Below, in pieces: positions 12,322 to 62,841 of a stretch of DNA of 64,000 nucleotides. Position 1 is the first letter of the stretch. Every line of letters starts with the position of its first letter. The stretch covers positions 1 through 64,000 of IMG/VR virus record IMGVR_UViG_3300017991_000002. One strand, 5' to 3'. The notes beneath the pieces were generated by a model. The model worked only from the letters and a program-made list of their open reading frames with translations, was not told the origin of the DNA and did not search any database. Both the position numbers and the translations under genes were made by a program.

Positions 12322-12350
12322 AATATAGGAACAGTGGTTCTGGTTGTCAA
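12322..12350 (-). promoter_or_regulatory. sigma70 promoter
   Basis: TTGACA-17 nt-TATATT on the minus strand. Confidence 0.7.
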
Positions 12351-12664
12351 GAATTCAATCGAAGTTTTCGATAACTTTCTCTCTTATTAAATGTGGGCCA
12401 GACGGTCGGTCTTGCCAGCTCTGCATCCTTGGGGTCTGTCGTGGACGTTGTTTGTGGGCGGAACATTTCCTGGGCTGCCTCCCAGCCGTTGTAGGCCATT
12501 ACCATTCGAACGAAGTAGTCGGGACGATCCTCGGGGAAAAAGTCTACTGGGGGGCCGAAGGAGTCCACCCACCAGGACACAAATTCCCGGGTAAAGACGA
12601 CGGACGGAAACCAGCTGGGAAGGTCCTCCGTGTTGAGCATTTCTTTCAGGGTTTCAGTGTTCAT
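12347..12664 (-). CDS. Hypothetical protein, RKLR-type tag
   Basis: Ends YRKLRLNS. Confidence 0.7.
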   Translation of the reverse strand: MNTETLKEMLNTEDLPSWFPSVVFTREFVSWWVDSFGPPVDFFPEDRPDYFVRMVMAYNGWEAAQEMFRPQTTSTTDPKDAELARPTVWPTFNKRESYRKLRLNS

Positions 12665-13020
12665 TTCTTCACCCTCAGCTTTCTGTAGAGCTTCACAGGT
12701 TTTCTTTCCTCCTGTTCCTCCATCTTCATCTTGAGTTCTTCATACTTCTGTTTCAGGGCATCTATTTGCCTTCGTAATACCTTCTGATCGATCTCATTCG
12801 CAGACTCTTCTGCGGCAGCCTGCGCCAATAACTCTTCCGCCTCGGGCCCGTGCAGATTAACCATGCGAGGTTCCAGAACAAATCGAGTTATGGCCTGCGA
12901 CTGGCTACGCCGTCGTTCTAGTTCCACCCGGCACTCGTAGCACACGGTCACCCCAACGATCATTTCAGGTTGGCTCAATGCACCGCCGCACTCGGAGCAG
13001 CTGTTCCCTTCCACACTCAT
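12661..13020 (-). CDS. C4 zinc-finger (TraR/DksA-like spacing) protein, tagged
   Basis: CSECG...VTVCYECR; ends YRKLRVKK. Confidence 0.65.
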   Translation of the reverse strand: MSVEGNSCSECGGALSQPEMIVGVTVCYECRVELERRRSQSQAITRFVLEPRMVNLHGPEAEELLAQAAAEESANEIDQKVLRRQIDALKQKYEELKMKMEEQEERKPVKLYRKLRVKK

Positions 13021-13319
13021 TTGAGCATCCTCAGCTTTCTTTTGTGAGGTAAGTTGTCTCTTATTGGTTCTACGGTCTTGGATGGGATCCCGCCGTTTCT
13101 GTACTTTCGCAGGCGTTCCAGGATATTCCTGAGTTCTTCATTGGCCGCTTGCTGACCCCAGGCCGCTGTATCCCCATGTTCAAGGAGTTCCTGGACAAGG
13201 CGCTCTCCTATCCTTATTCGATCGATTACCATCCTCTCGAACGCGGCGAGGTTGTACAGGTCCATCAATCCCCCCTCAATGTCTTCCATGATGCCAATTA
13301 TTCTTCCAAGCTCTAACAC
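13017..13319 (-). CDS. Hypothetical protein, tagged
   Basis: Ends KRKLRMLK. Confidence 0.7.
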   Translation of the reverse strand: MLELGRIIGIMEDIEGGLMDLYNLAAFERMVIDRIRIGERLVQELLEHGDTAAWGQQAANEELRNILERLRKYRNGGIPSKTVEPIRDNLPHKRKLRMLK

Positions 13320-13348
13320 CTTTTACGTTCTCCTACCTACTTCGTGAC

Positions 13349-13888
13349 TTATTCCAATCTTTCGAACACGGAAAAGATCCTAATTCGATTATTAAAGCCG
13401 CAGAGAACCCCTACCGCTGCTACGAACTTTGTTGACATTTCCTTCGGAGGGGAGGGAAGAATGTAGTGGATCATCCCAACCCTGCTTCCAGGCTCCACGG
13501 CATTGAGCATGTTCTTCAGCAATGCATTTGGCTTTGGGTAGGCCTCTCGTCCGACCTCGTAGTTCTCTGCATCCTCTGCACTGTATGGCGGGTCCGCCAG
13601 CATTGCCTTGAAGCCCGGGGGCAGCGGTTCCCTTGCATCCCGCAGGTAGTCTGGCCCGGTGGCCGGGTCGAGGTCTAGTGTTTTGTCCAGGGGACCAAAG
13701 CCCCCACGGTAAGGATAGTACCTCGCCATGCCGCCGCAGACATGGAGGACTGGGTCGTGGATGGATACCCCGAGCAATGCCCGGGCACGTTCTGGGAAGC
13801 CACCCAGGTAGGCACCGTAATACTTCCTACCGTCCTTCAACTTTGCCCGGGCAAGAATCCACATATCAGTTATTGGCCTGTAGCTCAT
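13349..13888 (-). CDS. Putative N6-adenine DNA methyltransferase
   Basis: VLHVCGG SAM-binding-like motif and LADPPY catalytic motif. Confidence 0.7.
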   Translation of the reverse strand: MSYRPITDMWILARAKLKDGRKYYGAYLGGFPERARALLGVSIHDPVLHVCGGMARYYPYRGGFGPLDKTLDLDPATGPDYLRDAREPLPPGFKAMLADPPYSAEDAENYEVGREAYPKPNALLKNMLNAVEPGSRVGMIHYILPSPPKEMSTKFVAAVGVLCGFNNRIRIFSVFERLE

Positions 13889-14169
13889 TTTGTCCTCCTT
13901 ACTCTCAACTTTCTATAAGGTTTGCAGGATTTTTTGGTCTTCTTGGACCGCAGGGGTCTTTCCTGCCGTTCATCATTCATCTCTTTCCTGAGCTCCCTTT
14001 TCATCGCCTCGTAAAAGCCAGCCATATCAGGCTCCTCCCCATAAAAATAGCGGCGGCAATTGGTACACATAGTCACCCCGGACGCCCGTTCGTACTCATT
14101 CAGATCGTCCCCGCACTCGGAGCACCGGTGGCTCTCCTCCTCGAACATCGTGTCGACTGCAATGCTCAT
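13885..14169 (-). CDS. C4 zinc-finger protein, tagged (paralog of 12661..13020)
   Basis: CSECG...GVTMCTNCR; ends YRKLRVRRTK. Confidence 0.65.
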   Translation of the reverse strand: MSIAVDTMFEEESHRCSECGDDLNEYERASGVTMCTNCRRYFYGEEPDMAGFYEAMKRELRKEMNDERQERPLRSKKTKKSCKPYRKLRVRRTK

Positions 14170-14471
14170 CGGTCCCCCATATTGAGTCTTCTTCCCGGAC
14201 GCCGGTGTTCTTCCTCACTCAGTTCAGGATGTTCAATTTCCTCCAGTTCTGAAAGGTCTATCCCAAACTCTTCCAGGAGCGGACAGTCCTCATAATTGCA
14301 CGGTGTGCGGGCATGTCTACATCGAGTAGTGTAGTTGGGATTCCTTGGCTGGGTCTCTAACTCTGCTGTAACATAGGTGGTATGTATGCCAACCGTTGCG
14401 TACGGACAAATCCCTTTGGAGTCAGCCATTCTTTCAACAAAATCAACAATCTTTCTTACATTCGGTTTCAT
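14166..14471 (-). CDS. Cys-rich hypothetical protein, tagged
   Basis: KGICPY..C..C..CPL; ends GRRLNMGDR; paralog of 35395..35628. Confidence 0.65.
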   Translation of the reverse strand: MKPNVRKIVDFVERMADSKGICPYATVGIHTTYVTAELETQPRNPNYTTRCRHARTPCNYEDCPLLEEFGIDLSELEEIEHPELSEEEHRRPGRRLNMGDR

Positions 14472-15031
14472 CTATTTAACCTCAGCTTTCTTTTGTAGTC
14501 CTTGGGCGCGGGGGTAGGAGTACAGAAGGTCCCTATTCTACGAAGGATTTCTTCAACTGCTGCTCGTACTCGTTCCTCCAACCGCTCTTGGGTATCCCTC
14601 AGGGAGGTTTCGAGGTCGAGGTCTTTTGATTCTCTTGTTCCCATGGATGTTGTCCACAGCCGGATTGCTCCATACCGGGTATAGGGAACCATTGGGACAA
14701 AGCGGACCCACGGGCTACGGCAGTTCGACGGGGTAGAGGACCGGGAGATTTGATCAATCTCATCGAGGAGTTCTGAGATAGTATCGTTACTGATCTCGAC
14801 ACAAAAGAGGTAGATCTTACCATCACTACCTTGGAATGCTGTATGTACCGCGATCACCGCTCCCAGAAACCTCTCGACGATGCTGTCGAGACTCTCAAAT
14901 TCCCTACACCTTCCTATGCAGGGACGTCGGTAGAAGCAATCGGACTGATGTCGCATATGGATTACAGTAAGGCCGGCTTCTCTCAAGGTATTAATAATGT
15001 TTGGGAGTCTTACCATTTTTGGGGTTTTCAT
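14468..15031 (-). CDS. Hypothetical protein, tagged
   Basis: Ends YKRKLRLNR. Confidence 0.7.
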   Translation of the reverse strand: MKTPKMVRLPNIINTLREAGLTVIHMRHQSDCFYRRPCIGRCREFESLDSIVERFLGAVIAVHTAFQGSDGKIYLFCVEISNDTISELLDEIDQISRSSTPSNCRSPWVRFVPMVPYTRYGAIRLWTTSMGTRESKDLDLETSLRDTQERLEERVRAAVEEILRRIGTFCTPTPAPKDYKRKLRLNR

Positions 15032-15549
15032 TTTCTTTCCCTTGTTTGAACGTTCAGTTTTCTTGTCAGCTTTGTTGGATTTTCAAGCTGGTGGATCCTT
15101 CTTCTTACCGTAATAAGATTGCGGGAGAGCAGATTGATCTCTTCTATGCAATGTTCATACGAAATGTACTCGGTTGTTGAGGGATACTTAAGGCATTCAT
15201 TCGCATCGTCTACCGCTTCCTTTAGCTTCTCAAGGATTTGGACTTCTTGAAGATATAACTCTTGCAGCCTTTTACTATTACCGAACGTCTTGCACGAGAG
15301 CTTATTGTTCCATCGACCCAATTGTCGGACCCGCTGCTCCAGTATTGCTTTCTTGCCTTCTTCACGGATAAGTTCCTCTCCCCAATTATTGAGGGTTTGC
15401 GGGGTTTCATTTTGTCGTGATTGCATAGGTTCTCCAGATCTTCCAGTCCCACAGTTTGCTTCCTGGTACCGGGCTAAAAATTGACGATACTTCTCGCACG
15501 TTCGATCGATTATTCGTGGGTAATATAAGTTCCTCATAATCGTTCCCAT
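15028..15549 (-). CDS. Coiled-coil hypothetical protein, tagged
   Basis: Ends TRKLNVQTRERK. Confidence 0.7.
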   Translation of the reverse strand: MGTIMRNLYYPRIIDRTCEKYRQFLARYQEANCGTGRSGEPMQSRQNETPQTLNNWGEELIREEGKKAILEQRVRQLGRWNNKLSCKTFGNSKRLQELYLQEVQILEKLKEAVDDANECLKYPSTTEYISYEHCIEEINLLSRNLITVRRRIHQLENPTKLTRKLNVQTRERK

Positions 15550-15626
15550 TATTTTTCCTTTTTAACGTTCAACGGGCCGCCTCTTTGACGTCGCGGACAA
15601 AACTTCCCATGCATACACTCCTTTGC

Positions 15627-15923
15627 TCATGCTCCTTGTCCTGTGTCTTCAATGCCCGGCAGGTGGGCATAAATATCAACCACTCCATCCATCACAACAT
15701 ACCTGCCGGCACCTAATCCCTCATGGGCGGCCCGTGCATCGAGTAGGTCTCTGAGGATTGAAATCTGCATAAGAGCATTGCTGGCCTCGATCCTTACAAT
15801 ATCATCATACTCGTAGTTAGCCTCAAGGATCTCCTGTGCCTCCTGAATCAGCCTTGCACAGGCCCTGAGTCGCTGCGCGCACCTTGTATGGTTAACTTTT
15901 TTCATGATCTTCCTCTTCCACAA
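15627..15923 (-). CDS. Hypothetical protein
   Basis: Tiles in the minus-strand operon. Confidence 0.6.
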   Translation of the reverse strand: MWKRKIMKKVNHTRCAQRLRACARLIQEAQEILEANYEYDDIVRIEASNALMQISILRDLLDARAAHEGLGAGRYVVMDGVVDIYAHLPGIEDTGQGA

Positions 15924-16134
15924 CTACCCACGAAAACATCATATCCAATCGCAGTGTATCACTCTTTGGGTTGTCGAGCAAGTCTACGAAACCTACCTCT
16001 TTCACAGCTTCCATCATTAAAAACACCAGCTCAGCTTCTGCTGCCAGACCCTGGAGTTTTCTGATCATGTTAATTTGTCCCACCGGTATCAATACTGTCA
16101 CTGGTTCTTTCTTATCACCTATCATTTTTGACAC
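15892..16134 (-). CDS. Hypothetical protein
   Basis: Tiles in the operon. Confidence 0.55.
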   Translation of the reverse strand: MSKMIGDKKEPVTVLIPVGQINMIRKLQGLAAEAELVFLMMEAVKEVGFVDLLDNPKSDTLRLDMMFSWVVVEEEDHEKS

Positions 16135-16546
16135 GTAGCCTCCTTACATACTTTGATGGCAGCTTGGGCTCTGGGCCTCTAGAGAGCTCATCAATCCTCT
16201 CAGCTATGCTCTTCTTGATCATTTTTAAATTATTGTACTCATTAAGTAGATTGACCTTCAAAGAGTACTCCAGACCAATCCGATCACGGGCGCTGACCTG
16301 ATCAATCCTCTCATACTTGTCAATAAGAGCATGAATTCTCCTGACAGAATCTCGTTGGGAGTTGTGAAGGATTGCAAGGATAAAATCATATGAAGCCTCT
16401 GATTTCTTTATCTCCTTTACAATATCTGCAACTGTAAAATCCAATTGAATTGTGCTCATATTTTCCTCCCCATCACCCGCCATGCCCAAAATGAAACTCA
16501 TGCACCAGCTGAGTTGGGTCATTGTCTTACCTGTTTGGACTAACAA
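16115..16546 (-). CDS. Hypothetical protein, tagged
   Basis: Ends VRRLRVKNDR; true start probably at the downstream MSTIQ. Confidence 0.6.
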   Translation of the reverse strand: MLVQTGKTMTQLSWCMSFILGMAGDGEENMSTIQLDFTVADIVKEIKKSEASYDFILAILHNSQRDSVRRIHALIDKYERIDQVSARDRIGLEYSLKVNLLNEYNNLKMIKKSIAERIDELSRGPEPKLPSKYVRRLRVKNDR

Positions 16547-16868
16547 TCTTCAACTTCCTCTTAAAGTCTACTGGTTGGGCTGGCTCCTTTTTCTCCCCAA
16601 ACTCTTGAATCCTCTTCCCGATGTTATGGTGAATATTTTCCAACTCCAGTCGACTGGCAACCATTATCGCTCTCAGTGCATGGAAGTCCCCAATCTCCCC
16701 GCTACGGCTACATTGTTTATATTCCCTGACTGCGGACTCTAATTTACAGGCCCAATAGTGTTGTTCATCAAACAGACTACTAAGATCCGGGTCAAAGAGT
16801 AAAGAACTCCTATCTTCACATAGTTTTACTGCCTCGTCAACTTCCCTCATAATGTTCATTATGATCAC
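16527..16868 (-). CDS. Hypothetical protein, tagged
   Basis: Ends FKRKLKIVSPNR. Confidence 0.65.
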   Translation of the reverse strand: MIIMNIMREVDEAVKLCEDRSSLLFDPDLSSLFDEQHYWACKLESAVREYKQCSRSGEIGDFHALRAIMVASRLELENIHHNIGKRIQEFGEKKEPAQPVDFKRKLKIVSPNR

Positions 16869-16883
16869 CTCTTTTTCGTATCT

Positions 16884-17044
16884 TCAGTCAGGGGACTTTC
16901 CATTAATACTCAAAGTCGGTCTTACCTTCAGCTTCCTGTGCTTGTATTTCCTGGTCTATCTTTCACTTTTATAATCCTTCCCGCCTCTTCGAGTAGGGAC
17001 ATATAGTCTTTGAGCTCAAGTGCCCTCTTATATGCCTTAAACAT
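16884..17044 (-). pseudogene. Frameshifted small tagged ORF
   Basis: MFKAYKRALELKDYMSLLEEAGRIIKVKDR, then one nt short of the frame encoding RKYKHRKLKVRPTLSINGKSPD. Confidence 0.45.
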
Positions 17045-17381
17045 TTGGCAACCTCAATCTTCTACAAGACGCCCTGGATTTTCTTGGCCTCTTACCAGCC
17101 TTCTCTAGTTCCCATTCCTTGGCCCGTTCCGAGGCCATGCGCTTGGTTTCCCTGCACAACTCTGCAATGTCCATAATTGTGTCAAGTCGATACTGAAGGA
17201 TAGGATCCGACGGGTTCCTTCCCGACCTCTCATATCGATTGGAAGCCCTCTCGATCTCTTCAATAAGATTTTTCCTCTCGTTGTCATACCATGAAAGAAG
17301 ATGAGCCAGCTCAGGATCAAATGTTCCAGCCATTGTAGCTTCCCGTATAATGTCTGCTGCTTCTTTTAATCGATCAGTCAT
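17037..17381 (-). CDS. Hypothetical protein, tagged
   Basis: Ends CRRLRLPNV. Confidence 0.7.
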   Translation of the reverse strand: MTDRLKEAADIIREATMAGTFDPELAHLLSWYDNERKNLIEEIERASNRYERSGRNPSDPILQYRLDTIMDIAELCRETKRMASERAKEWELEKAGKRPRKSRASCRRLRLPNV

Positions 17382-17404
17382 TCAGGACACCTGCTTTCAA
17401 CGCC

Positions 17405-17833
17405 TCACTCGTTTAATTCAGGAAAGAGGTGAGCCACTCTGCCGATAGAATCCCGACCCGAGTCCGGCATCCTTCCCTCCTCCAATGCCTTCTTCGTCTC
17501 CTCCGGGATAACCTTTATATCAATCGAGTCCACAAAAATATTGATCTCTGGAATTCCACTATCATTACCGGACACCGTTGTCTCCGGATCTTCCTGCACC
17601 ATGTAAAATACTGAACCGCTGGAAAACGGCTGCTTTGCAATCTCCTCAACTTGCCGCGGTACCGACAACTTCCCAAAGTCAAAAGAGCATTCCTTCGGTG
17701 GCCGGGGTTCCAGGAAGTTGCCAACGTAATTCAACTCCTCTTTAAAGTAGTCAAGGATCTCCTGTTCGGTCCCTGAAATTATCAAATCTTTTTTAATCGC
17801 CATAATTTTCCTTCCTTTCGGTTTTCGGGCCAT
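17405..17833 (-). CDS. Hypothetical protein
   Basis: Tiles in the operon. Confidence 0.6.
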   Translation of the reverse strand: MARKPKGRKIMAIKKDLIISGTEQEILDYFKEELNYVGNFLEPRPPKECSFDFGKLSVPRQVEEIAKQPFSSGSVFYMVQEDPETTVSGNDSGIPEINIFVDSIDIKVIPEETKKALEEGRMPDSGRDSIGRVAHLFPELNE

Positions 17834-17877
17834 TTATCAGGCCAAAATGGCCCACAAATGGCTCATTTGGGTCATTT

Positions 17878-18144
17878 TTACTCTTTATTGAAAAGTCGAG
17901 CAAGGTGTCCTTTTCTTTCTTCCATTGCTTTATCAAGATCCAGCAATCTTAGCCATCGCTCTATCCTCTCCTCATCCATCTGACGAATCTCCTGCACAAG
18001 CTCCTTGGCTGTAATTGACAGATCCTCATGAATTCTCGCCCTCATCTTCATCGGTGCCCTTTGTTCTGTGTCTACTACGGACAAAATCAGAGATAACGTA
18101 GGTCTACTCATGGTCGTCCTCCTTAGGGTCGGTAGCATCCTCAA
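17878..18144 (-). CDS. Hypothetical protein
   Basis: Likely starts at the internal MSRPTL. Confidence 0.55.
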   Translation of the reverse strand: MRMLPTLRRTTMSRPTLSLILSVVDTEQRAPMKMRARIHEDLSITAKELVQEIRQMDEERIERWLRLLDLDKAMEERKGHLARLFNKE

Positions 18145-18325
18145 ATTCGAGACAGGTCCCGGTTATCGGCCCTCCAACCGGACGACGCTCCCCCGCGGAA
18201 AGCATACAAAGAAATATTTCCGGATGACCAACCAAATGTGCTCCGTGCTTACACATATCGCAAGTTTTACCAAGACGTATATTTTCCTCGAGTCTCCAGT
18301 CCATTATGTCAACCTCCTTGACCAT
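18104..18325 (-). CDS. Small Cys-rich protein
   Basis: CDMCKH..C..C pattern. Confidence 0.55.
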   Translation of the reverse strand: MVKEVDIMDWRLEENIRLGKTCDMCKHGAHLVGHPEIFLCMLSAGERRPVGGPITGTCLEFEDATDPKEDDHE

Positions 18326-18395
18326 GACCTTATCAGACTCACTACTGTGACAAATGATTTGGCTCGTCTGCTCATTTATTCCCCCTAAAAAATAA

Positions 18396-18526
18396 GAGGT
18401 GGGCCGGGCGCTACTCCGGCTGGCTTAAAAGGCCTCAGCCTCGGGTTACATCACGTATAGTCCCGTCAAGGACGACCCCGATATTCTGCGACGGCTTAGC
18501 GTGTCTGCTTTCCACGCCGCCACCTC
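18396..18526 (-). ncRNA. tRNA-like structured RNA (non-canonical)
   Basis: 7-bp terminal stem GAGGUGG/CCACCUC; D-like arm GCGUG-GAAAGCAGA-CACGC; T-like arm GCCGG-AGUAGCGC-CCGGC; enlarged middle region. Confidence 0.6.
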
Positions 18527-18857
18527 ATAATATTTCAGTAACCTTACCATATACCCGTTTCGTCCATCCATTGATCCTGCCATGATTATTTCCTATTAGG
18601 CAGCCTCTTTTGTCGTTCTTGGCCTTTACCAGATGGGTATAGAAGTTGCCCTTGACCTTACAATAAACAATGTCCCCAACCTCAACTTCCTCCCAAGTTG
18701 CCGGGGAGAGCTTCACCGGCTGCCGAGACTTCAGGATCGGGGTCATAGAGTTTCCGGGTTCCTTGGAAACAACGATCTCACCTGCTAACAATTTTTGTGC
18801 TTTGATATTATTCATTAGGTTTTTATAACCCTCCCGTGTCCTCGAGATCTTCTTCAA
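18525..18857 (-). CDS. Peptidase S24/S26-like protein
   Basis: GNSMTP (Ser motif) and VGDIVYCKV..FYTHLVK. Confidence 0.65.
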   Translation of the reverse strand: MKKISRTREGYKNLMNNIKAQKLLAGEIVVSKEPGNSMTPILKSRQPVKLSPATWEEVEVGDIVYCKVKGNFYTHLVKAKNDKRGCLIGNNHGRINGWTKRVYGKVTEIL

Positions 18858-18859
18858 TG

Positions 18860-19042
18860 TCAGGGCAAAAAACCATCAACAATTTCGGCATTTTCAAACG
18901 GCCTGAATTTTCTCGCCTCAGCCAATGCCGCAAGTGCATCTTTGATATTGTCATAATTCTTCGCGTTCTCTTCGACAGTGGTTCGCGGTGGATCGCCTTC
19001 GCCATCGGCAATCCACACCCCTTTTTCTAATAATACTTTCAT
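18860..19042 (-). CDS. Hypothetical protein
   Basis: Tiles in the operon. Confidence 0.6.
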   Translation of the reverse strand: MKVLLEKGVWIADGEGDPPRTTVEENAKNYDNIKDALAALAEARKFRPFENAEIVDGFLP

Positions 19043-19043
19043 C

Positions 19044-19514
19044 TTATTTCCCGCTTTCTTTACATTTTTCAGGAGTGCTGAAAATATCCCCTACCACCTT
19101 ATGAAGAACATTCGTTCCACTCCGCAGTATGTCTTCCGACACAATATACGGGCCCAGTAGGTAATATTTAAACGCCGACTGCTTCTGATTATATCGAACC
19201 AATCTCAGCCCTTTATCAGTCTCAACAATATCCCCCTCATAAATACGAAGTCCTCGCCATGTATTCTCTTCCTGTCCCTTTCTTTGTTCCTCAGTCGCCT
19301 CATCCCACGAGGTGGCATCATATTGTCCAATGAACTGCATCAAGATAACATGCTGGAGCATACTGTCTGGCTCTTGATCACCCAGGATGACGGGATCTCC
19401 ATCTTCGTTAACAACAAATACTCCCAGGTCATCAAAAAAGACATCATAAACCATCTCTTTGTCTTTTGTAAGCCATGCCCGATATAGATGATCTCTTGGC
19501 TCCAATGTTTCCAT
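19044..19514 (-). CDS. YopX-family protein
   Basis: YRAWL...MQFIG...IYEGDIV...VVGDIF. Confidence 0.75.
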   Translation of the reverse strand: METLEPRDHLYRAWLTKDKEMVYDVFFDDLGVFVVNEDGDPVILGDQEPDSMLQHVILMQFIGQYDATSWDEATEEQRKGQEENTWRGLRIYEGDIVETDKGLRLVRYNQKQSAFKYYLLGPYIVSEDILRSGTNVLHKVVGDIFSTPEKCKESGK

Positions 19515-19517
19515 GGT

Positions 19518-19952
19518 CTAGCCCTCCCCTCCCGACATCCTCAGTTTTCTGGGATTACGCTTAATTCCTTCCGGCACAGGTCTACCCTCCAACCATCCCG
19601 CCTCTTTTGCAACCTTCCTGGCCTTTTCCATATCTTCAAATACCACCATTTCCACCTTTACTACTGCCCTCCCATTACTCCTATAATCAAGGTCTGGAAA
19701 AATAACCTGCCTCACTCTCCAAGATTCAATACCGGGGCCTCTTACGTCAAAATTACAAGATCTTGGAGGGATCTCTGGCCTATTCCCATCCATGATCTCA
19801 TTTCCGTGATCATCATACAGCGTTATCCTCAGATCAGCCAAGCTGACCTCGACCGTCTCTATGACCGGAAGTGTCTCTGTCTTCAGGCAAGGCAGTCTGG
19901 CCGTATAAGCTAAAGACCCCTCAAAAACCCCGTTGATGGTGGTCGTTGTCAT
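19518..19952 (-). CDS. Hypothetical protein, tagged
   Basis: Ends PRKLRMSGGEG. Confidence 0.65.
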   Translation of the reverse strand: MTTTTINGVFEGSLAYTARLPCLKTETLPVIETVEVSLADLRITLYDDHGNEIMDGNRPEIPPRSCNFDVRGPGIESWRVRQVIFPDLDYRSNGRAVVKVEMVVFEDMEKARKVAKEAGWLEGRPVPEGIKRNPRKLRMSGGEG

Positions 19953-20935
19953 TCTCCAAGCCTCCGGGGGATGACGGCAGGTAGGCTTCGTCTTCCGGGG
20001 TCTACAACATTTGGAAGAACGGGGGAAGAGACCAAATCCTCTATTGAATAGTTCTTGACCTTGCTGATATATTTTATCGTTTTAACTGGGTACCATAACA
20101 ACTGCACCGTTCCCTTATCCCCATTTGAGCTGAGACGAACCCCATGGATATATACCAGCCCGTTTTCCTTGGCCTTTTTAGTTGGCTCATATCTCTTGTT
20201 TCCGTGAGTATCTTTCACGTTTTTCTGAAGACCTATATTGGTCAACAGCCTGTTTACACATCTGGATCGATGCCACGAAGACATCGATTCAAAGTGACGG
20301 AACCACAAACCAAAATCGGTCACATTAAGGGCAGTATTGTCAGGATAAGTCTCTGCCAGAGGGCCGTTTGAGGAAAAATAGTCGATATAGACGGTTTCGC
20401 CTGTCGACCGCTGAACCTCTCTGGCCACTGCCTGTTTTTCATCCGATGTAAGTTTTCTATCCCTAGAATACCTGGCAATTCTCATTTCATGTTTGAGAAT
20501 CTCATAGACTTCCTTTCTTCTGCGAGCAAATTCCTGCAGACTTTTGGGAGGCTTCTTCATCTCTGGGAGGGCATCGTGTTTGATTTTCTGCAACTCTTCC
20601 TCAGCATCAATCAGGTACTGCCGAACGGCCTTTCCCGTTTCCGTCTTCTCGAGCTGGGCAAAATGCTTCGCTTGATTGAGGGTGATAGTGTATTCTATTG
20701 CCTTTGAGCCACCACCCATGTTCTCACGTTTGATAATTTTATCAAATGTGAAAAAGTCTTTCCCTTCAACAAGTTCTAAATCTCTGATCCGATTTTTGAC
20801 CCAATTGGAAAACTCTTGTTTCGATCCCAATGCTTCCCACAATGATCGGGCATCAACTCCCAACTTTTCCTCATCGCCAAAGTTATAGTTCTTAACTTCA
20901 ACCTTCTGAAACTTCTGTAAACTCTCTTGTGTCAT
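19949..20935 (-). CDS. AntA/AntB-family antirepressor-like DNA-binding protein
   Basis: VDARSLWEALGSKQEFSNWVKNRI..EGKDF..EYTITLNQAKHFAQLEKTETGKAVRQYLI. Confidence 0.8.
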   Translation of the reverse strand: MTQESLQKFQKVEVKNYNFGDEEKLGVDARSLWEALGSKQEFSNWVKNRIRDLELVEGKDFFTFDKIIKRENMGGGSKAIEYTITLNQAKHFAQLEKTETGKAVRQYLIDAEEELQKIKHDALPEMKKPPKSLQEFARRRKEVYEILKHEMRIARYSRDRKLTSDEKQAVAREVQRSTGETVYIDYFSSNGPLAETYPDNTALNVTDFGLWFRHFESMSSWHRSRCVNRLLTNIGLQKNVKDTHGNKRYEPTKKAKENGLVYIHGVRLSSNGDKGTVQLLWYPVKTIKYISKVKNYSIEDLVSSPVLPNVVDPGRRSLPAVIPRRLGE

Positions 20936-20976
20936 AGTTCTTCCTTTCTTTAGGGTTTTTTACCTATCCTGGACAC

Positions 20977-23416: not shown

Positions 23417-23417
23417 G

Positions 23418-58829: not shown

Positions 58830-61375
58830 TTGCCGGAAAACAAAGCGGAAATAAAGGATACATATCAACGATTCTTCGATTACATGAATGCCGGATATCC
58901 TCTTATCTGGATCCAGACACAGGAGGATGCCCGCGTCATTTCTGAAATATCCCGACATGATAAGGATGAGACGCAGTGGTATGTCTGGGATATTGCCGCC
59001 GGCTTTCGTCAGCTAATCGAGAATGCTCAGGCAGAGGAGATGGAAGACCCAACTGGTCCGATTAAGAAGATTGAATCCCTTCCTGATCGGTCGGTAGTGT
59101 TCTTAAAGGACTTTCATCTTTTCATCACCAACCCGACCGTCTTTCGAATGATGAAGAACCTGATCCCTGTATTGGAGACAACGGAGAAGCATTTAGTGGT
59201 TATTTCCCCCACCGACAAAATGCCGATAGAGATCGAGACGGACTTCGTAATATGGGATTTTCCACTTCCCGATAGGGACGAGCTCGTAAATGAGGCAAAG
59301 AAACTGGCGGAGGATAACGACCTCACAAACATCAATGAGGAGTATGCTGCCTCTGCCGCCGGAATGGGATTAAATCCGGCCAGGAACGCTTTCTCCTTGT
59401 CCTTGGTTACCAGGGGAGGTAAGCTCGATCGTGAGCTTATTGAGGAGCAGAAGAAGGACAACATTCGAAGAGTGGAAGGACTCGAGTGGTTTCCGGTCGT
59501 TGAGGAGAAGGAAGTCGGGGGACTCGACAATATGAAAGATTACTTCAAATCACGTTGTCGAGGATTTACCGATCCGAAGCTTCCACTGCCGAAGGGAGTT
59601 CTGCTTGTTGGTCTTCCCGGCGCCGGCAAGTCGTTGTCTGCCAAGATGGCGGCACATATTTTCCAGACACCGCTCATCAGGTTCGATCTTGGGTCTCTGA
59701 AGGGATCCCTGGTTGGTGAGACGGAGAGCAAGACTCGTAAGGCACTGCAAGTGATCGATGCAAACGCACCGTTGGTGGTGTGGGTGGATGAAAAGTCGAT
59801 CTTGTCCACCTTAAATCCCGTGAACTGCTGGGACACTGAAACAGGTAGTGCTGTCAGCTATCAGCAGCCAAGCCTTGGGAGGAATTCCTTGGAAGGTTCA
59901 GAGGTCAGAGCATACCGTCCAGAACGGACGATGAAGCTCGTAGGGTCCAAGAGGACTCGAAGCGCGGGACAGATAGTTGACTTTTTTGATTAACCTGCTA
60001 TAGTATTAGAAAAGGTTCTTCTAATATTGACTAAAGCAGGAGGTTTTGAAATGTGGTCCAAGAAGTATGATGAATGTGTAAAATGTGGTTCCTCTGAGAG
60101 AAAGCATGTAGGCAGGGGTCTATGTTCCCTTTGTTACTCAAGAGACTGGGGAAATAAAAATGCTGACAAGCTTCGGAAACAACGGCATGAATGGTACATA
60201 AGAAGTGGGGGGAAGAATAGAGCCAGAATATTAAGGGAAGAGCGTTATTATGCAGGTAAAAGGAATCACATTCTGGAGCGAGATGGTTATAAGTGCGTCA
60301 AGTGTGGAGAAGATAGGGTAAGTCAATTGATTGTGCATCATGGAGACGGGAGTGGCAGGGGATCTAAAGAGCACAATAATGAAGACGATAATCTTGTAAC
60401 TTGGTGCCGAAGTTGCCATGCGAGACATCATAGTCCTCATAGAGGTAGGATATACAAGCCAGCTGGGTGGTCAGCTTGTTATTCAGCATGTATTGAATGC
60501 GGAACTACGGAGAGGCCACACGGTAGTAAAGGTTTGTGTAAGACCTGCTATGCCCGTAAGCTAAGAGCTGGTAAGGGTTATATGTGGACAGGATGGTCTT
60601 TTCATTATGAACACTGTATAGACTGTGGGACCACAGAAGTGAAACATCATTCGAAGGGTCTATGCACACGTTGCTATGATAAAAAGCGGCGTGAGGAGGC
60701 CAGAATGAAACGTCAACTATCTGATGATATGATCCGAACTCATGCGAAAGTATGAGAGGTTAATCGGACTCGGATTGACCGTAACATATAAATCCTTGTA
60801 TTTAAAGGGTTTTGGAGATCGAAAAAGCATTGGGAGGAGTGATGTCTTCGTCCAGATCAGACGCTGGAACAACCAGTAATATGTTCTCGGCACTGCTGAC
60901 GTGGATGCAGGAGTCTACGAAACCGCACTTCATCGTGGCAACGTGCAATGAAATTAGTGAATTGCTCGAGATCTCACAAGGTGCCCTCCTCCGTCGGTTT
61001 GATGATATCTTCTTCGTCGATCTTCCCACCCAGAAAGAGCGGGAAGAGATTATCAAGATTATGAACGAGCGGTATGGGACGAAGATACCGGTTAAGATGG
61101 CAAACGATATGCCGAATTGGACAGGTGCCGAAATAGAGCGCTTTGCCAGGGACTTGCTCTTCTGCAATGCCAAGACAAAGGCTGAGATGGATGAGGTCAA
61201 GGACGGAATTCGGTTGATTTACAACCAAAACCAGAATATAATTGAAACACTAAGACGGTGGGCGAAGGTTAACGCTCGCCGAGCGAATGCGTATCTGCCA
61301 GAGGAAGATGCCAGCGCTTCTGATAAGAAGTCGAAACGATCCTTGAGGTATCCCTCACAAACAACCAATGTGTAA
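58830..61375 (+). CDS. Ycf46-like AAA+ ATPase, spliced: join(58830..59789,60815..61375), 506 aa
   Basis: Walker A GLPGAGKS; splicing restores Walker B WVD|EIEKA..SDAGT..LLTWMQE; RRFD; WTGAEIE. Confidence 0.88.
59977..60004 (+). promoter_or_regulatory. Intron-internal sigma70-like promoter
   Basis: TTGACT-16 nt-TATAGT with TG extension. Confidence 0.55.
60051..60755 (+). CDS. Intron-encoded HNH homing endonuclease with three Zn-finger-like repeats
   Basis: CVKCG..VHH.D..N..DNLVTWCRSCHARHH; three C..CG...H..KGLC..CY repeats; AGGAGG RBS before ATG 60051. Confidence 0.85.
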   Translation: MWSKKYDECVKCGSSERKHVGRGLCSLCYSRDWGNKNADKLRKQRHEWYIRSGGKNRARILREERYYAGKRNHILERDGYKCVKCGEDRVSQLIVHHGDGSGRGSKEHNNEDDNLVTWCRSCHARHHSPHRGRIYKPAGWSACYSACIECGTTERPHGSKGLCKTCYARKLRAGKGYMWTGWSFHYEHCIDCGTTEVKHHSKGLCTRCYDKKRREEARMKRQLSDDMIRTHAKV

Positions 61376-61391
61376 CCAGGAGGTAAGGTAA

Positions 61392-61754
61392 ATGAGTCAT
61401 ACATCAGATATCAATCTGAAAATAAATTCTATTGAGGCTCTCCGCAGAGTTTGCGACAAGCTCGGTTGGGAGATGAACGAGAATGGTTCTGCTACTTTCT
61501 ATGATGGAAAGAAACGGGACGGTATCACCGTCAAGCTTCCGGGCTGGAGGTATGCCGTCGTTATCAATCGTGAGGAGGGGAAGGTCCTCTTCGACAACTA
61601 CAATGGTAGTTGGGGGAACATTAAACATCTGAATAAGTTAAAGGCACACTACGCGATCGAGTATGGAAAGATCCAAGCTCGAAGGATGGGATACACAACC
61701 GTGTATCAGGAAAACAATGAGGGCGAACTTGTCCTCACGGTTAACGTAGAATAG
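61392..61754 (+). CDS. DUF1257 (Ycf35-like) protein
   Basis: MSH..I..I.S.EALRRVCDKLGW..FDNY.G.WG..LKAHYAIE; typical neighbour of Ycf46-like genes. Confidence 0.8.
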   Translation: MSHTSDINLKINSIEALRRVCDKLGWEMNENGSATFYDGKKRDGITVKLPGWRYAVVINREEGKVLFDNYNGSWGNIKHLNKLKAHYAIEYGKIQARRMGYTTVYQENNEGELVLTVNVE

Positions 61755-61765
61755 AGAGGTGTACG

Positions 61766-61960
61766 ATGGGAAAAAAGATCATTATCTCTGCCAACGAAAA
61801 CACCGGTGATATCAATGTGACAACAGAGGGATTTAAAGGGGCCCAATGTCTTAAGGCCTCGAAATTCCTCGAGGAGGGTCTTGGTGGCGGTAAGATGACA
61901 AAGACCGCTGAATTTTACGAGGCCGAAAAGTTCGATGAGCATGTCCAGCTCAATACCTAA
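61766..61960 (+). CDS. DUF2997 protein
   Basis: G.INVTTEGFKGAQCLKASKFLEEGLG..KTAEFY. Confidence 0.8.
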   Translation: MGKKIIISANENTGDINVTTEGFKGAQCLKASKFLEEGLGGGKMTKTAEFYEAEKFDEHVQLNT

Positions 61961-62141
61961 GAATAAACTCATAATATCTGTCGGCCTGTGGGATCCTGAC
62001 CGTGTCAGGATCCGCACCGACGGGTGCGTTGACCCGGAAACGATCCTTGCGATCTGCCCTGAGGACGAGCAATTCAAGAAATGGGTAAACAAGAATCGTC
62101 CGGAGGAAGGTATGTTCTTTAGTACCCACCTATGTGGTTAA
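61935..62141 (+). CDS. Hypothetical protein
   Basis: Overlaps the upstream gene. Confidence 0.5.
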   Translation: MSMSSSIPKNKLIISVGLWDPDRVRIRTDGCVDPETILAICPEDEQFKKWVNKNRPEEGMFFSTHLCG

Positions 62142-62232
62142 CAGTACTATCAGGCCCACTGTCTGTGGGCCTCGCAATAATCATTTATTTTTCTTTATTT
62201 GAATCACTGTTCTCTACGGAAGGAGGTACTCC

Positions 62233-62841
62233 ATGGCCTTCAAGTTCGACATTATCTTGAAGCCAAAGAAGAGAGGTAACTGGCGTCCTGAAGTTATTAT
62301 TACTCTGGAAATCCTGGCTCCGGCATTTCCACACAGGCCTTACGTACCACGATTACACATAGTCTCAATAAATATGAAGGACTTTATTGAGAAAGGGATA
62401 AGGCCTGAAGAGGCAGAATGGTTTTGGCCTGTTACACACGAAAAGCCCTTCAAAATAATTTCACGAGATAAGTGGTTCCTTGATCTCAGCGACCTTGCAA
62501 GGGATTCTTCTGATAATCTGAAGGAGGATTGCACCCATGCTTTTCATGATAGTCCAAAGAGGGGCGTGGAGGCTGCTTATCCCTTAACGGGAGGAGACAT
62601 AGGTCCCGGTGGATTTCTTGAGGTAAACTATAGACACGATCTACATTTATTTCTGCCGTGGAGGCCGGGAATCAGGCCGGACTATTCAGACTATATGGCC
62701 AGGTTTGAAAATGCAGGTCGCTGGTTTGCTGAAAGATTAAAGGACGGCGAAGATAGCGGACAAAACGATGAGATGATTATCTCTGTAACCTCTGCGAGAA
62801 AAAAGTCGAGGGAGCAGGGTGTCAGGAAATTACGCTTTTGA
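62233..62841 (+). CDS. Hypothetical protein, tagged
   Basis: AGGAGG RBS; ends VRKLRF. Confidence 0.75.
   Translation: MAFKFDIILKPKKRGNWRPEVIITLEILAPAFPHRPYVPRLHIVSINMKDFIEKGIRPEEAEWFWPVTHEKPFKIISRDKWFLDLSDLARDSSDNLKEDCTHAFHDSPKRGVEAAYPLTGGDIGPGGFLEVNYRHDLHLFLPWRPGIRPDYSDYMARFENAGRWFAERLKDGEDSGQNDEMIISVTSARKKSREQGVRKLRF

What the first reader, a model, noticed from the sequence alone, without database searches (positions are those of the whole stretch)
12347..62841. About 45 unrelated small proteins share a C-terminal [RK][RK]L[RKN][LIVMF] tag: candidate undescribed addressing/adaptor system
Seen: I count about 45 ORFs with the motif, nearly all within about 20 residues of the C-terminus (e.g. 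YRKLRLNS, YRKLRVKK, KRKLRMLK, FKRKLRLHK, IRKLRIQK, SRKLRLSK, FRKLRINKK, YKRKLRVPK, YRKLRIK, FRKLRIRK, and plus-strand VRKLRF), usually after a Pro/charged linker. Codons vary widely (CGA AAA CTT CGA, AGA AAG CTG AGG, AGG AAA TTA CGC), so selection is on the peptide. The tag is attached to diverse and often degenerate domains (Zn fingers, HicB-like, DUF3820-like, DnaB-like fragment, gp21-like). It is absent from the intact enzymes (Rnl1, MazG, macrodomain, NADAR, exonuclease, MTase, YopX). Known: ClpX reads basic/hydrophobic C-terminal tags such as MuA RRKKAI; poxvirus ankyrin proteins pair variable domains with a constant C-terminal ligase-docking motif. Inference: the tag is (a) a degron timing early proteins, (b) a docking motif that makes this a library of bait-plus-tag adaptors recruiting an AAA+ machine (the window encodes Lon-like, BCS1-like and Ycf46-like ATPases), or (c) a localisation/packaging signal.
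Basis: partly seen in the sequence, partly recalled or inferred. Interest (0 to 1): 0.95.

Follow-up and report, generated by a model that had tools for sequence, protein, structure and literature searches.

The report
Shared peptide tag on phage proteins
In one uncultivated 205-kb T4-like phage, about 60 small, mutually unrelated accessory proteins end in the same five-residue peptide (Arg-Lys/Arg-Leu-Arg/Lys-hydrophobic) on a flexible leash, which looks like a common handle for one unknown partner and has no described precedent in phages.

Summary
In the window, 47 ORFs carry R-[KR]-L-[RKN]-[ILVMF]. Forty-two of them, in the minus-strand array 12.3-52.0 kb, have it within 12 residues of the C-terminus (41 of 102 proteins against 0.2 expected by shuffling). 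Arg at position 0 and Leu at position 2 are invariant.

The signal is in the peptide. All six Leu codons and both Arg codon families occur. The motif is always in the frame of its own ORF, but in all three phases, 10-132 nt away, relative to the next start. It persists where no downstream gene needs a ribosome-binding site. A secondary AGR/G-ending codon bias lets it double as that site.

Walking the contig showed that the tag continues on the plus strand to about 92 kb (17 strict or relaxed tags, then 4 more). It is absent from 55 late/structural proteins.

Tagged proteins are soluble, mostly acidic ORFans. Two are exceptions: an extra gp21-fold protease and an ExoX-C-like protein.

No relative of this phage exists in any collection searched, so conservation could not be tested.

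The best guess (0.4) is a docking or degradation handle for an AAA+/Lon-type machine. The tag-bearing arrays also encode a LonC-like protease and two AAA+ ATPases. The closest known peptide is the SspB tail that binds ClpX. The function is untested.

The parts
12347..52025 (-). Minus-strand array of about 100 small genes; 42 of them carry the tag within 12 residues of the C-terminus.
   Evidence: Tagged ORFs (start-end): 12347-12664, 12661-13020, 13017-13319, 13885-14169, 14166-14471, 14468-15031, 15028-15549, 16115-16546, 16527-16868, 17037-17381, 19518-19952, 21777-22277, 23066-23416, 23904-24335, 27797-28075, 29996-30484, 31373-31516, 31516-31614, 31834-32064, 32067-32354, 32351-32560, 32557-32970, 33876-34196, 34193-34420, 34410-34733, 34720-35394, 36396-36578, 36643-36861, 36858-37082, 37079-37318, 37284-37550, 38288-38557, 38568-38864, 38868-39380, 39890-40216, 41098-41520, 41738-42187, 43162-43812, 44575-45144, 49050-49745, 49742-50296, 51342-52025.
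12347..12664 (-). Last gene of the array. Its tag is written CGA AAA CTT CGA TTG, and no downstream gene overlaps it.
   Evidence: The peptide is kept with codons that contain no GAGG, so the motif does not depend on a neighbouring ribosome-binding site.
27797..28075 (-). Tagged ORF whose tag is written CGT CGT CTG CGT CTT; a separate GGAGG follows it.
   Evidence: This is a second all-CGN version of the same peptide.
38868..39380 (-). Tagged protein with an N-terminal ExoX-like_C (DUF3820-type) module.
   Evidence: Pfam PF20600, E = 1.4e-9. No homologue was found by the word-indexed search.
49742..50296 (-). Tagged extra copy of a T4 gp21-type head maturation protease. It has a folded domain (residues 20-150), a low-confidence linker, and a tail that carries the tag.
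   Evidence: phrog_207 E = 8.6e-11. AF2 mean pLDDT 80. Foldseek best match 5JBL, probability 1.00. None of 149 homologues carries the tag.
29996..30484 (-). Tagged ORF with a weak resemblance to the N-terminal part of Gp23.
   Evidence: Pfam Gp23 E = 1.5e-3 and phrog_138 E = 2.3e-3; both are below the curated thresholds.
22609..23028 (-). ORF with the motif 41 residues before the end.
40499..41098 (-). ORF with the motif 61 residues before the end. It also has one hydrophobic, membrane-like segment near residue 24.
50903..51370 (-). ORF with the motif 22 residues before the end.
42187..42483 (-). ORF with the motif at residues 7-11, in frame just after the TAG stop of the macro-domain gene 42487-42909.
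   Evidence: A GTG start preceded by GGAG would make this an N-terminal tag. TAG is otherwise an ordinary stop in this genome.
31516..31837 (-). Gene 31562-31837 ends at a G5 run; a tag (RRLRL) follows in the +1 frame as the 32-codon ORF 31516-31614.
   Evidence: This is either a frameshifted tagged gene or an assembly error.
62233..62841 (+). Plus-strand tagged ORF with RKLRF at the extreme C-terminus, two genes upstream of the LonC-like gene.
63580..64000 (+). 5' end of an 815-residue LonC-like protease (it runs off the window; whole gene in L076:11348-13795).
   Evidence: Pfam LonC_helical, AAA_32, LonB_AAA-LID and Lon_C. The best solved relative is M. taiwanensis LonC, E = 1.2e-89. The GDSA serine and the K-x-EGFF lysine are kept; Walker A and B are degenerate.
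24320..25777 (-). Untagged AAA ATPase in the middle of the tagged array; its AAA module is closest to BCS1.
   Evidence: Pfam AAA E = 1.8e-15. PDB BCS1 E = 2.7e-21 over residues 224-412.
58830..61375 (+). Second AAA gene (Cdc48/p97-like), split by an HNH endonuclease ORF.
   Evidence: AAA profile positions 1-65 are in 58830-59993, the HNH ORF is 60027-60755, and AAA profile positions 74-130 are in 60812-61375.
52398..53782 (.). AT-rich divergent region from which the two tag-bearing arrays run outwards; it holds eight GGTACTTGT iterons.

Best explanation
The motif is a translated short linear docking peptide: R-[KR]-L-[RK]-hydrophobic, often followed by x-K. It sits on a flexible Pro/Lys/Glu-rich leash at the end of at least 58 soluble, mostly acidic, mutually unrelated accessory proteins of one T4-like jumbo phage. 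All these proteins are thereby presented to one common receptor pocket that reads Arg0 and Leu2 strictly. I think the most likely receptor is an AAA+/Lon-type proteolytic machine. That would be either the phage's own LonC-like protease, possibly fed by the phage's two AAA+ ATPases, or the host ClpX N-domain. On this reading the tag works as a shared degradation or tethering handle. It would clear the accessory proteins on schedule, and possibly drag whatever host protein each one has bound to the same fate.

Shown: the motif exists, it is selected as a peptide, it sits on a disorder-like leash, and it is confined to the accessory arrays. Inferred: that it docks to one receptor. Guessed from context and resemblance: that the receptor is a protease or unfoldase.
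For: Peptide-level selection:
- Arg0 and Leu2 are invariant, while all six Leu codons and both Arg codon families are used.
- The motif is always in its own ORF's frame, but in phases 21/15/5 and at 10-132 nt relative to the next start.
- It is kept with CGN codons where no ribosome-binding site is needed.

Leash architecture:
- The linker is enriched in Pro, Lys and Glu and depleted of hydrophobic residues.
- In the one tagged protein that could be modelled, a confident domain is followed by a low-confidence linker and then the tail.

Independence from position and fold:
- Three internal instances and one N-terminal instance exist.
- The tagged proteins have unrelated bodies.

Specific pocket rather than generic charge: Arg is never replaced by Lys at position 0, and Leu is never replaced by Ile, Val or Met at position 2. 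None of the 42 tagged proteins has a membrane-like segment.

Link to proteolysis:
- The arrays that carry the tag also encode a LonC-like protease with an intact Ser-Lys dyad and two AAA+ ATPases.
- Characterised LonC degrades only unstructured substrates without ATP (PMC3391209).
- The SspB tail that tethers cargo to ClpX is RGGRPALRVVK at the C-terminus of a flexible linker (PMC3983244).
- The published ClpX zinc-binding-domain consensus is L-K-x-h (PMC7226468).
- That tail works wherever it sits in a polypeptide, and an anchor-linker-bait fusion is enough to destroy a target (PMC12373786).

Distribution: 41/97 and 13/62 proteins are tagged in the two accessory arrays, against 0/55 late/structural proteins (p = 1e-8). 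The tag is absent from enzymes that are needed throughout infection.
Against: - No binding, stability or localisation data exist.
- The host is unknown, so its ClpX or Lon cannot be examined.
- The match to the ClpX-binding consensus is partial: here the hydrophobic residue is at +2 from Leu, not +3, and Arg0 has no counterpart in that consensus.
- The terminal Lys is frequent mainly in the stereotyped junction (9/14 against 6/23). It may therefore reflect the A-rich spacer before the next ATG rather than binding.
- Homologues of the BCS1-like AAA occur in phage-like contigs that have no tag, so that ATPase is not tag-specific.
- Co-location of the Lon and AAA genes with the tags is circumstantial in a region that covers 40% of the genome.
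- A tagged, apparently active protease is not an obvious candidate for timed destruction.
- No relative exists in which to test whether the tag and a receptor co-occur.
Confidence: 0.4

Rival explanations
1. The tag is a docking or localisation handle for a non-proteolytic hub. It would concentrate the accessory proteins at one place or on one host machine (for example RNA polymerase, the ribosome, a chaperone such as DnaK, the nucleoid, or a phage-made compartment or replication factory) without changing their stability.
For: All the evidence that this is a specific peptide handle on a leash applies equally here. The strict Arg0/Leu2/hydrophobic-4 spacing (i, i+2, i+4) fits an extended peptide in a groove. 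From memory, eukaryotic cyclin RxL docking motifs bind in that way. Acidic bodies with a basic tail (median pI 5.1 against 7.6) would suit recruitment to an acidic surface or to nucleic acid. The arrays diverge from an iteron-rich region.
Against: No candidate hub was identified. Nothing in the accessible 135 kb resembles a shell or compartment protein, but most genes there have no annotation. Generic DNA or membrane binding would tolerate Lys at position 0 and Ile or Val at position 2, which never occur. No tagged protein has a membrane-like segment.
Confidence: 0.3
2. The tag is an encapsidation signal. Tagged proteins are loaded into the prohead and injected with the DNA, as T4 internal proteins are through their N-terminal capsid-targeting sequence, or as encapsulin cargo is through C-terminal peptides.
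For: One tagged protein has the T4 gp21 prohead-protease fold, and the tag replaces the helical, Lys-ended tail seen in many homologues. Another resembles the Gp23 N-terminus weakly. The phage has a T4-type head (Gp23, S77 protease-scaffold and gp13 in L083). From memory: C-terminal tails target the HK97 protease and encapsulin cargo to HK97-fold shells.
Against: The canonical 529-residue protease-scaffold sits in the head module and is untagged. None of 55 late/structural proteins carries the tag. Tagged genes lie in small-ORFan arrays running out from a control region, which is the usual layout of early genes. About sixty different small cargo species would be unprecedented.
Confidence: 0.08
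3. The motif is a nucleotide-level signal read in the mRNA or DNA, and the peptide is a by-product. Candidates are a ribosome-binding site with its spacer for the next gene, a phage promoter, an RNase or repressor site, or a recombination joint between gene cassettes.
For: The nucleotide consensus is AGA AAG YTG AGG, and its GAGG lies about 8 nt before the next ATG in the commonest junction. The 4-nt ATGA overlap occurs in 16/41 tagged against 6/60 untagged genes (p = 0.001). At ribosome-binding-site distance, all 17 Arg codons at position 3 are AGR. AGR is over-used at position 0 whatever the distance.
Against: The variable positions are exactly the synonymous ones: the third codon positions, the first position of the Leu codon (C20/T22), and the first position of the Arg codon (A/C). 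The fifth codon is N-T-N. All-CGN versions exist (12347, 27797, 22609). The motif is in frame with its own ORF in every case but in all three phases relative to the next start, at 10-132 nt. Downstream genes of untagged genes have ordinary ribosome-binding sites without this peptide. No flanking nucleotide conservation is seen.
Confidence: 0.03
4. The tag is an inherited joint with little present function. The arrays grew by copying a cassette end (tag, ribosome-binding site and ATGA), and the bodies diverged or were replaced upstream of it.
For: Codon use leans towards one version of the sequence (AGA AAG YTG AGG) even away from ribosome-binding-site distance. Fourteen genes share the same junction with exactly two residues after the motif. 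Adjacent paralogues exist (36643-36861 and 36858-37082). Out-of-frame and orphan tags show turnover.
Against: Bodies have diverged beyond recognition and synonymous sites have drifted, yet Arg0 and Leu2 are kept 42/42. That requires purifying selection on the peptide now. Copying explains how the tag spread, not why it is kept.
Confidence: 0.05

Closest known systems
SspB-type adaptor tail (XB peptide) that tethers cargo to the zinc-binding N-domain of ClpX
   Same: The architecture is the same: a variable binding domain, a flexible linker and a short basic/hydrophobic C-terminal peptide. The XB peptide is RGGRPALRVVK (PMC3983244). It shares Leu, then Arg, then an aliphatic residue, then x, then a terminal Lys with the commonest form here. 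The published domain-binding consensus is L-K-x-h (PMC7226468). The tail works wherever it sits in a polypeptide, and an anchor-linker-bait design is enough for targeted degradation (PMC12373786).
   Different: Here Arg two residues before Leu is invariant, and the hydrophobic residue is at +2 rather than +3. SspB is a single host protein, not about sixty phage proteins. The host and its ClpX are unknown, and binding is untested.
C-terminal degrons of AAA+ proteases (ssrA-type and the MuA-type basic class read by ClpX; Lon degrons)
   Same: They are short terminal peptides that commit unrelated proteins to one protease. Phage regulators are classic substrates (from memory: lambda O, N, CII and Xis, and the Mu repressor).
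   Different: Those ClpX degrons are read at the very C-terminus. Here the distance to the end varies from 0 to 12 residues, with 22-61 in three cases and one N-terminal instance. No known degron has this sequence. No phage is known to tag a large share of its accessory proteome.
Capsid and nanocompartment targeting peptides (T4 capsid-targeting sequence of internal proteins; HK97 protease tail; encapsulin cargo-loading peptides)
   Same: In each, a short peptide on a linker addresses unrelated cargo to one destination. This phage has a T4-type head, and one tagged protein has the gp21 fold.
   Different: The T4 signal is N-terminal and is removed by gp21 (from memory). The sequence is different. 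Here the tag is absent from the head and late gene block, and the canonical protease-scaffold is untagged.
C-terminal translocation signals shared by hundreds of unrelated type IV secretion substrates (from memory: the Arg-rich tails of Agrobacterium substrates and the Glu-rich block of Legionella substrates)
   Same: The logic is the same at the same scale: many unrelated proteins carry one loosely placed C-terminal signal that is read by one coupling machine.
   Different: Those signals are compositional and degenerate, whereas this one has two invariant residues. They belong to cellular secretion systems, not to a phage, and no translocase is identified here.
Poxvirus ankyrin / PRANC (F-box-like) families and the eukaryotic cyclin RxL docking motif
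   Same: PRANC families pair variable target-binding domains with a constant C-terminal module that recruits a degradation machine. The RxL motif has the same residue pattern: basic, x, Leu, x, hydrophobic, bound in extended form (from memory).
   Different: PRANC is a folded domain of about 50 residues on homologous ankyrin proteins. Cyclins do not exist in bacteria. The resemblance is one of logic or pattern only.

Membership tests
SspB-type ClpX-tethering tail (XB) | The peptide matches the consensus that binds the ClpX zinc-binding domain (L-[KR]-x-small hydrophobic; XB = ALRVVK at the C-terminus). | tested here: inconclusive
   The tag has L-[RK]-[ILVM]-x, often followed by K. Leu and the basic residue fit. 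The hydrophobic residue is one position early. Arg0 has no counterpart in the consensus (PMC3983244; PMC7226468).
SspB-type ClpX-tethering tail (XB) | The tail is separated from a folded binding domain by a flexible linker. | tested here: met
   Linker composition. The AF2 model of 49742-50296 shows a confident domain, then a stretch with pLDDT near 49, then the tail.
SspB-type ClpX-tethering tail (XB) | It binds ClpX and increases delivery of bound cargo. | not testable with these tools
   The host is unknown, no ClpX sequence is in hand, and no complex prediction was available.
Extreme C-terminal ClpX degron (ssrA or MuA class) | The signal lies at the very C-terminus with a free carboxylate. 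| tested here: not met
   Only 2 of 42 tags end the protein. The distance to the end varies from 0 to 12 residues, and four instances are internal or N-terminal.
T4 capsid-targeting sequence | It is an N-terminal peptide on proteins packed into the prohead and is removed by gp21 at an L/I-x-E site. | tested here: not met
   The tag is C-terminal and has no Glu site. It is absent from 55 late/structural proteins, including the head module.
Ribosome-binding site or other nucleotide signal | Conservation lies in the bases, independent of reading frame, at a fixed distance from the next start. | tested here: not met
   Synonymous positions vary. The motif is locked to its own ORF's frame. It lies in phases 21/15/5 and at 10-132 nt relative to the next start. 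A secondary AGR bias at ribosome-binding-site distance is present.
Membrane-anchoring basic/amphipathic C-terminal tail | Generic basic-plus-hydrophobic composition that tolerates K/R and I/L/V swaps, often on membrane-associated proteins. | tested here: not met
   Arg0 and Leu2 are invariant. None of the 42 tagged proteins has a membrane-like segment. Binding to lipid was not tested.
T4 gp21 / Peptidase S77 (for tagged ORF 49742-50296) | Family profile match, gp21 fold, and conserved His and Ser motifs. | tested here: met
   phrog_207 E = 8.6e-11. Pfam S77 scores 20.1 bits, below the 27-bit cut-off. Foldseek finds 5JBL with probability 1.00 and TM 0.58-0.63. The family's 'VSH' and 'G-x-S-x-RG' columns read TSH and GFSICG in this protein. 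Activity was not tested.
LonC subfamily (for the gene starting at 63580) | Lon protease domain with a Ser-Lys dyad, a LonC helical insertion, and Walker motifs that cannot hydrolyse ATP. | tested here: met
   Pfam LonC_helical, AAA_32, LonB_AAA-LID and Lon_C. M. taiwanensis LonC E = 1.2e-89, with GDSA and K-x-EGFF aligned. Walker A reads GAPGTGRR and Walker B reads GYLIVDA with no Glu, like GPPSLGKHE and GYLILDA in the characterised enzyme (PMC3391209). The lack of ATPase activity is inferred.
BCS1-type AAA (for 24320-25777) | AAA module closest to BCS1, plus the BCS1-specific N-terminal domain and a membrane anchor. | tested here: inconclusive
   The AAA module's best solved match is BCS1, E = 2.7e-21. 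The first 215 residues match nothing, and no Pfam BCS1_N hit was found.

The most novel reading that the evidence does not exclude
The arrays are a natural library of targeted-degradation adaptors. Each tagged ORFan would bind a different host protein (defence, transcription, division and so on) through its variable acidic body. The constant tail would tether the complex to one protease or unfoldase, either the host ClpX or the phage's own LonC-like protease with its AAA+ partners. The phage would then dismantle the host proteome with about sixty interchangeable bait-plus-handle modules, the natural counterpart of engineered anchor-linker-bait degraders.
Probability: 0.15. Interest if true: 0.97.

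Novelty: new variant of a known kind. Interest (0 to 1): 0.85.

Why it matters
Most genes of large phages are small ORFans with no handle for study. Here about sixty of them declare a common partner through one pentapeptide. A single pull-down with a synthetic peptide and its Arg0 and Leu2 mutants could assign a shared pathway to a third of a phage's accessory proteome.

If the partner is a protease or unfoldase, this would be the first phage known to use a genome-wide degradation or tethering tag. It would also supply a compact, portable tag for controlling protein stability or recruitment.

If the partner is something else, it identifies a hub that this phage treats as central.

The finding also shows how one 15-nt stretch can carry both a selected peptide and the next gene's ribosome-binding site, and so act as a reusable joint between gene cassettes.

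The main limits are that the phage is uncultivated, its host is unknown, and it has no relatives in present collections.

Tried and rejected
Searches for relatives, all negative:
- Megablast of 12 kb against 50,697 phage records gave no match.
- The search for related loci with the 716-residue protein and with the LonC-like protein returned only the source contig.
- Nine of ten tested proteins are singleton 90% clusters; the tenth (49742-50296) is not in the collection as an exact sequence.
- Word-indexed searches with two tagged proteins returned only themselves.
- The best homologue of the BCS1-like AAA is 36% identical. The phage-like or cellular loci around five such homologues carry no shared C-terminal motif.

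Nucleotide-pattern scan of IMG/VR with the stereotyped junction (AGRAAGYTGAGRNT-N6-ATGA): 65 stretches matched, but only the source contig had more than one match. The few loci with several peptide matches turned out to be short spurious ORFs.

Exhaustive HMMER search with the tagged protease: 272 homologues were found, and none of the 149 examined carries the tag.

Literature: full-text searches for the tag strings, for shared C-terminal motifs in phage proteins and for phage LonC found nothing relevant.

RNA: no tRNA gene and no Rfam family occurs in the window.

Promoter and terminator consensus scans were uninformative; promoter-like sites were at the shuffle level.

Rejected ideas:
- A stop-codon reassignment that would fuse the ORFs. 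All three stops are used, and neighbouring ORFs are in different frames.
- One hidden protein family.
- A membrane-topology signal.
- The tagged protease being the phage's only maturation protease. A canonical one sits in the head module.
- A second gp21-like paralogue at 51342-52025. This is unproven: the only evidence is a 20-residue pairwise match at E = 0.007, with no profile hit.

Not done: dN/dS (no relatives and no micro-diversity; overlapping assemblies were identical over 22 kb), complex prediction, and host assignment.

Full report
WHAT THE WINDOW IS. The window is the first 64 kb of IMG/VR contig UViG_3300017991_000002 (205,367 bp). The same genome was assembled from several samples, and the overlaps I compared were identical.

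Genes up to about 52.4 kb are on the minus strand. Later genes are on the plus strand. The two blocks diverge from a 1.4-kb AT-rich region.

Walking along the contig with exact-protein look-ups reached a T4-type head module about 45 kb beyond the window's start. It holds a 529-residue S77 protease-scaffold, Gp23 and gp13, and is preceded by large tail-like genes. So this is a distant T4-like jumbo phage.

It has no usable relatives:
- nothing in 50,697 phage records;
- only itself in IMG/VR;
- singleton clusters among about 15 billion proteins;
- a best AAA homologue at 36% identity.

THE OBSERVATION. The regex matches 56 times in the minus-strand frames and 5 times in the plus frames. Forty-seven matches lie in credible ORFs:
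- 42 within 12 residues of the C-terminus in the array 12347-52025;
- three at 22-61 residues from the end;
- one at residue 7;
- one on the plus strand.

Forty-one of 102 array proteins carry the motif in their last 20 residues. Within-protein shuffling gives a mean of 0.2 and a maximum of 2 in 1000 trials.

Arg at position 0 is 42/42 and Leu at position 2 is 42/42. Position 1 is K31/R11, position 3 is R33/K5/N4, and position 4 is I13/L12/V12/M5. The commonest ending is two more residues, with a final Lys or Arg in 24/42.

PEPTIDE OR NUCLEOTIDE? The nucleotide consensus is AGA AAG YTG AGG NTN. The positions that vary are the synonymous ones:
- the third codon positions;
- the first base of the Leu codon (C20/T22);
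- the first base of the Arg codons (A or C, never giving Ser).

All six Leu codons occur, and 17% of the Arg codons are CGN. Versions written entirely with CGN exist, including the last gene of the array, which has no downstream neighbour (12347-12664; also 27797-28075 and 22609-23028).

The motif is always in the frame of its own ORF. Relative to the next gene's start it lies in all three phases (21/15/5), at 10-132 nt. No conservation extends into the flanking bases. This is selection on the peptide.

There is also a real secondary layer. AGR, AAG and G-ending Leu codons are over-used. In the 22 tags that lie 13-26 nt before the next start, all 17 Arg codons at position 3 are AGR, against 11 of 15 elsewhere. 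The 4-nt ATGA overlap is enriched after tagged genes (16/41 against 6/60, p = 0.001).

So the tag often doubles as the neighbour's ribosome-binding site. Tag, spacer and ATGA together form a stereotyped joint. The over-use of AGR at position 0, whatever the distance, may reflect spread of the tag by copying.

WHAT CARRIES THE TAG. With the tags trimmed off, all-against-all BLAST finds only three weak pairs.

Twenty-six small tagged proteins have no credible Pfam hit (one weak match at E = 0.005) and no PHROG hit. The larger ones yield only:
- an ExoX-like_C module (E = 1.4e-9);
- a head maturation protease (phrog_207, E = 8.6e-11);
- weak Zn-ribbon and Gp23 N-terminal matches.

The protease-like protein (49742-50296) models with confidence as a domain spanning residues 20-150. 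A low-confidence stretch follows, and then a tail with the tag (mean pLDDT 80). Its best structural match is T4 gp21 (5JBL, probability 1.00). It keeps the family's His and Ser motifs. None of 149 homologues from an exhaustive search carries the tag. The phage has a separate, canonical, untagged protease-scaffold in its head module. The tag was therefore added to pre-existing folds in this lineage.

Tagged proteins are soluble; none of the 42 has a membrane-like segment. Their bodies are mostly acidic, with a median pI of 5.1 against 7.6 for untagged neighbours.

The residues before the motif are enriched in Pro, Lys and Glu (15-residue window). They are depleted of hydrophobic residues (0.27 against 0.38 in the protein body, 20-residue window, p = 1e-8).

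WHERE THE TAG IS AND IS NOT. Just beyond the window's end lies an 815-residue LonC-like protease. After it, a second array of tagged small genes runs on the plus strand.

Counts of proteins with a C-terminal tag:
- 41/97 in the minus array;
- 13/62 in the plus array by the strict motif, or 18/62 if position 1 is free and position 3 may be S or T;
- 4/26 in the next 10 kb;
- 0/55 in the late/structural block (Fisher p = 1e-8).

Within the arrays, these recognisable enzymes are untagged: Rnl1, NADAR, an RNase_T exonuclease, YopX, AntA, a CHAP protein and the AAA ATPases. The tag thus marks about 60 accessory ORFans over about 80 kb.

Decayed or displaced tags also exist:
- one out of frame behind a G5 run (31516-31837);
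- an orphan between 16868 and 17037;
- one in frame after the TAG stop of the macro-domain gene.

HOW IT MOST LIKELY WORKS. Three features point to a short linear motif that docks in one specific pocket, probably in extended form. Arg is never replaced by Lys, and Leu never by another aliphatic residue. The conserved positions have an i, i+2, i+4 spacing. The motif sits on a disorder-like leash, and it tolerates internal or N-terminal placement. I hold that much with about 0.85 confidence.

Which pocket is inference. I favour a protease or unfoldase (0.4), for these reasons:
- The tag-bearing arrays encode a LonC-like protease with the Ser-Lys dyad aligned and with Walker motifs degenerate in the same way as the characterised M. 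taiwanensis enzyme. That enzyme degrades only unstructured substrates and needs no ATP (PMC3391209).
- The same arrays encode a BCS1-like AAA and a Cdc48-like AAA.
- The closest known peptide is the SspB tail, RGGRPALRVVK. It sits at the end of a flexible linker and tethers cargo to the ClpX N-domain (PMC3983244). The published binding consensus is L-K-x-h (PMC7226468). The tail acts wherever it is placed, and an anchor-linker-bait fusion is enough to destroy a chosen target (PMC12373786).

Under this reading the tag either times the removal of accessory proteins or makes them adaptors.

The caveats are serious:
- The match to the ClpX consensus is partial.
- The terminal Lys may be a by-product of the A-rich spacer before the next start.
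- Homologues of the BCS1-like AAA occur in tag-less genomes.
- Co-location is weak evidence in a region this large.
- Nothing has been measured.

RIVALS.
- A non-proteolytic hub or localisation signal (0.3) fits all the structural evidence equally well.
- An encapsidation signal (0.08) is suggested by the gp21-fold protein. The tag-free late block and the untagged canonical protease-scaffold speak against it.
- A purely nucleotide signal (0.03) is contradicted by the frame and codon data.
- An inert inherited joint (0.05) explains how the tag spread, but not why two residues have stayed invariant while everything else diverged.

NOVELTY. Full-text searches for the tag strings and for shared C-terminal motifs on phage proteins found nothing. 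Every plausible mechanism is a variant of a known kind of signal: a degron, an adaptor tail or a targeting peptide. What is new is the sequence and its use across a large share of a phage's accessory proteome. The most novel reading that remains open is a natural library of bait-plus-handle degraders (probability about 0.15).

Noticed in passing
window 53147-53556, and 11229 and 11608: The 9-mer GGTACTTGT occurs 10 times against 0.24 expected, always on the plus strand. Eight copies, often 23 or 45-46 nt apart, lie in the divergent AT-rich region between the two arrays. Two lie in the gene-poor gap at the other end of the minus array. They look like iterons or operators that mark both borders of the tagged array (an origin, or binding sites for a regulator).
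   Followed up: partly
window 58830-61375 (+): An AAA ATPase gene is split. AAA profile positions 1-65 are in 58830-59993, an HNH endonuclease ORF lies at 60027-60755, and AAA profile positions 74-130 are in 60812-61375. This is probably an intron carrying a homing endonuclease.
   Followed up: partly
L083:16363-18550: The Gp23 major head protein gene is likewise in two pieces (227 and 164 residues), separated by an ORF with a TnsA-like endonuclease domain.
   Followed up: no
window 31516-31837 (-) and 16868-17044 (-): Tags are displaced from their genes. The first is RRLRL in the +1 frame directly after the stop of 31562-31837, at a G5 run. The second is RKLKV in a stop-bounded frame beside the 38-codon ORF 16928-17044. 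They could be decaying tagged genes, assembly indels or programmed frameshifts.
   Followed up: partly
window 42187-42909 (-): The macro-domain gene (42487-42909) ends at TAG, and the same frame continues with a linker, the tag and the whole next ORF. Either the next protein has an N-terminal tag (GTG start after GGAG), or read-through would give a tagged macro fusion. TAG is an ordinary stop elsewhere (18 of 94 genes).
   Followed up: partly
window 49742-50296 and 51342-52025 (-); L083:14192-15781: The phage has an extra, short gp21-fold protease with its catalytic motifs in the accessory array, in addition to the canonical 529-residue protease-scaffold. The first tagged gene of the array (51342-52025) shares the 'G-x-x-Y-P-R-x-x-x-E-x-A' stretch and may be a further diverged copy (pairwise E = 0.007 only). 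What an accessory-array prohead-type protease does is unknown.
   Followed up: partly
window 1168-2662 (-) against L079:8503-9999: Two window ORFs (283 and 204 residues) are called as one 498-residue gene in another assembly of the same phage. The assemblies therefore differ by at least one indel or stop here.
   Followed up: no
L079:17417-18964 and L081:10456-13275: Three adjacent late proteins (364, 147 and 939 residues) end in nearly the same stretch (SDG-T/S-NWWI-F/L). One has a weak baseplate match (E = 1.4e-4). They look like paralogous tail or baseplate proteins with a shared C-terminal module.
   Followed up: no
L081:15945-17139: A sulfotransferase and a stand-alone response-regulator receiver domain are encoded among the tail-like genes.
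   Followed up: no
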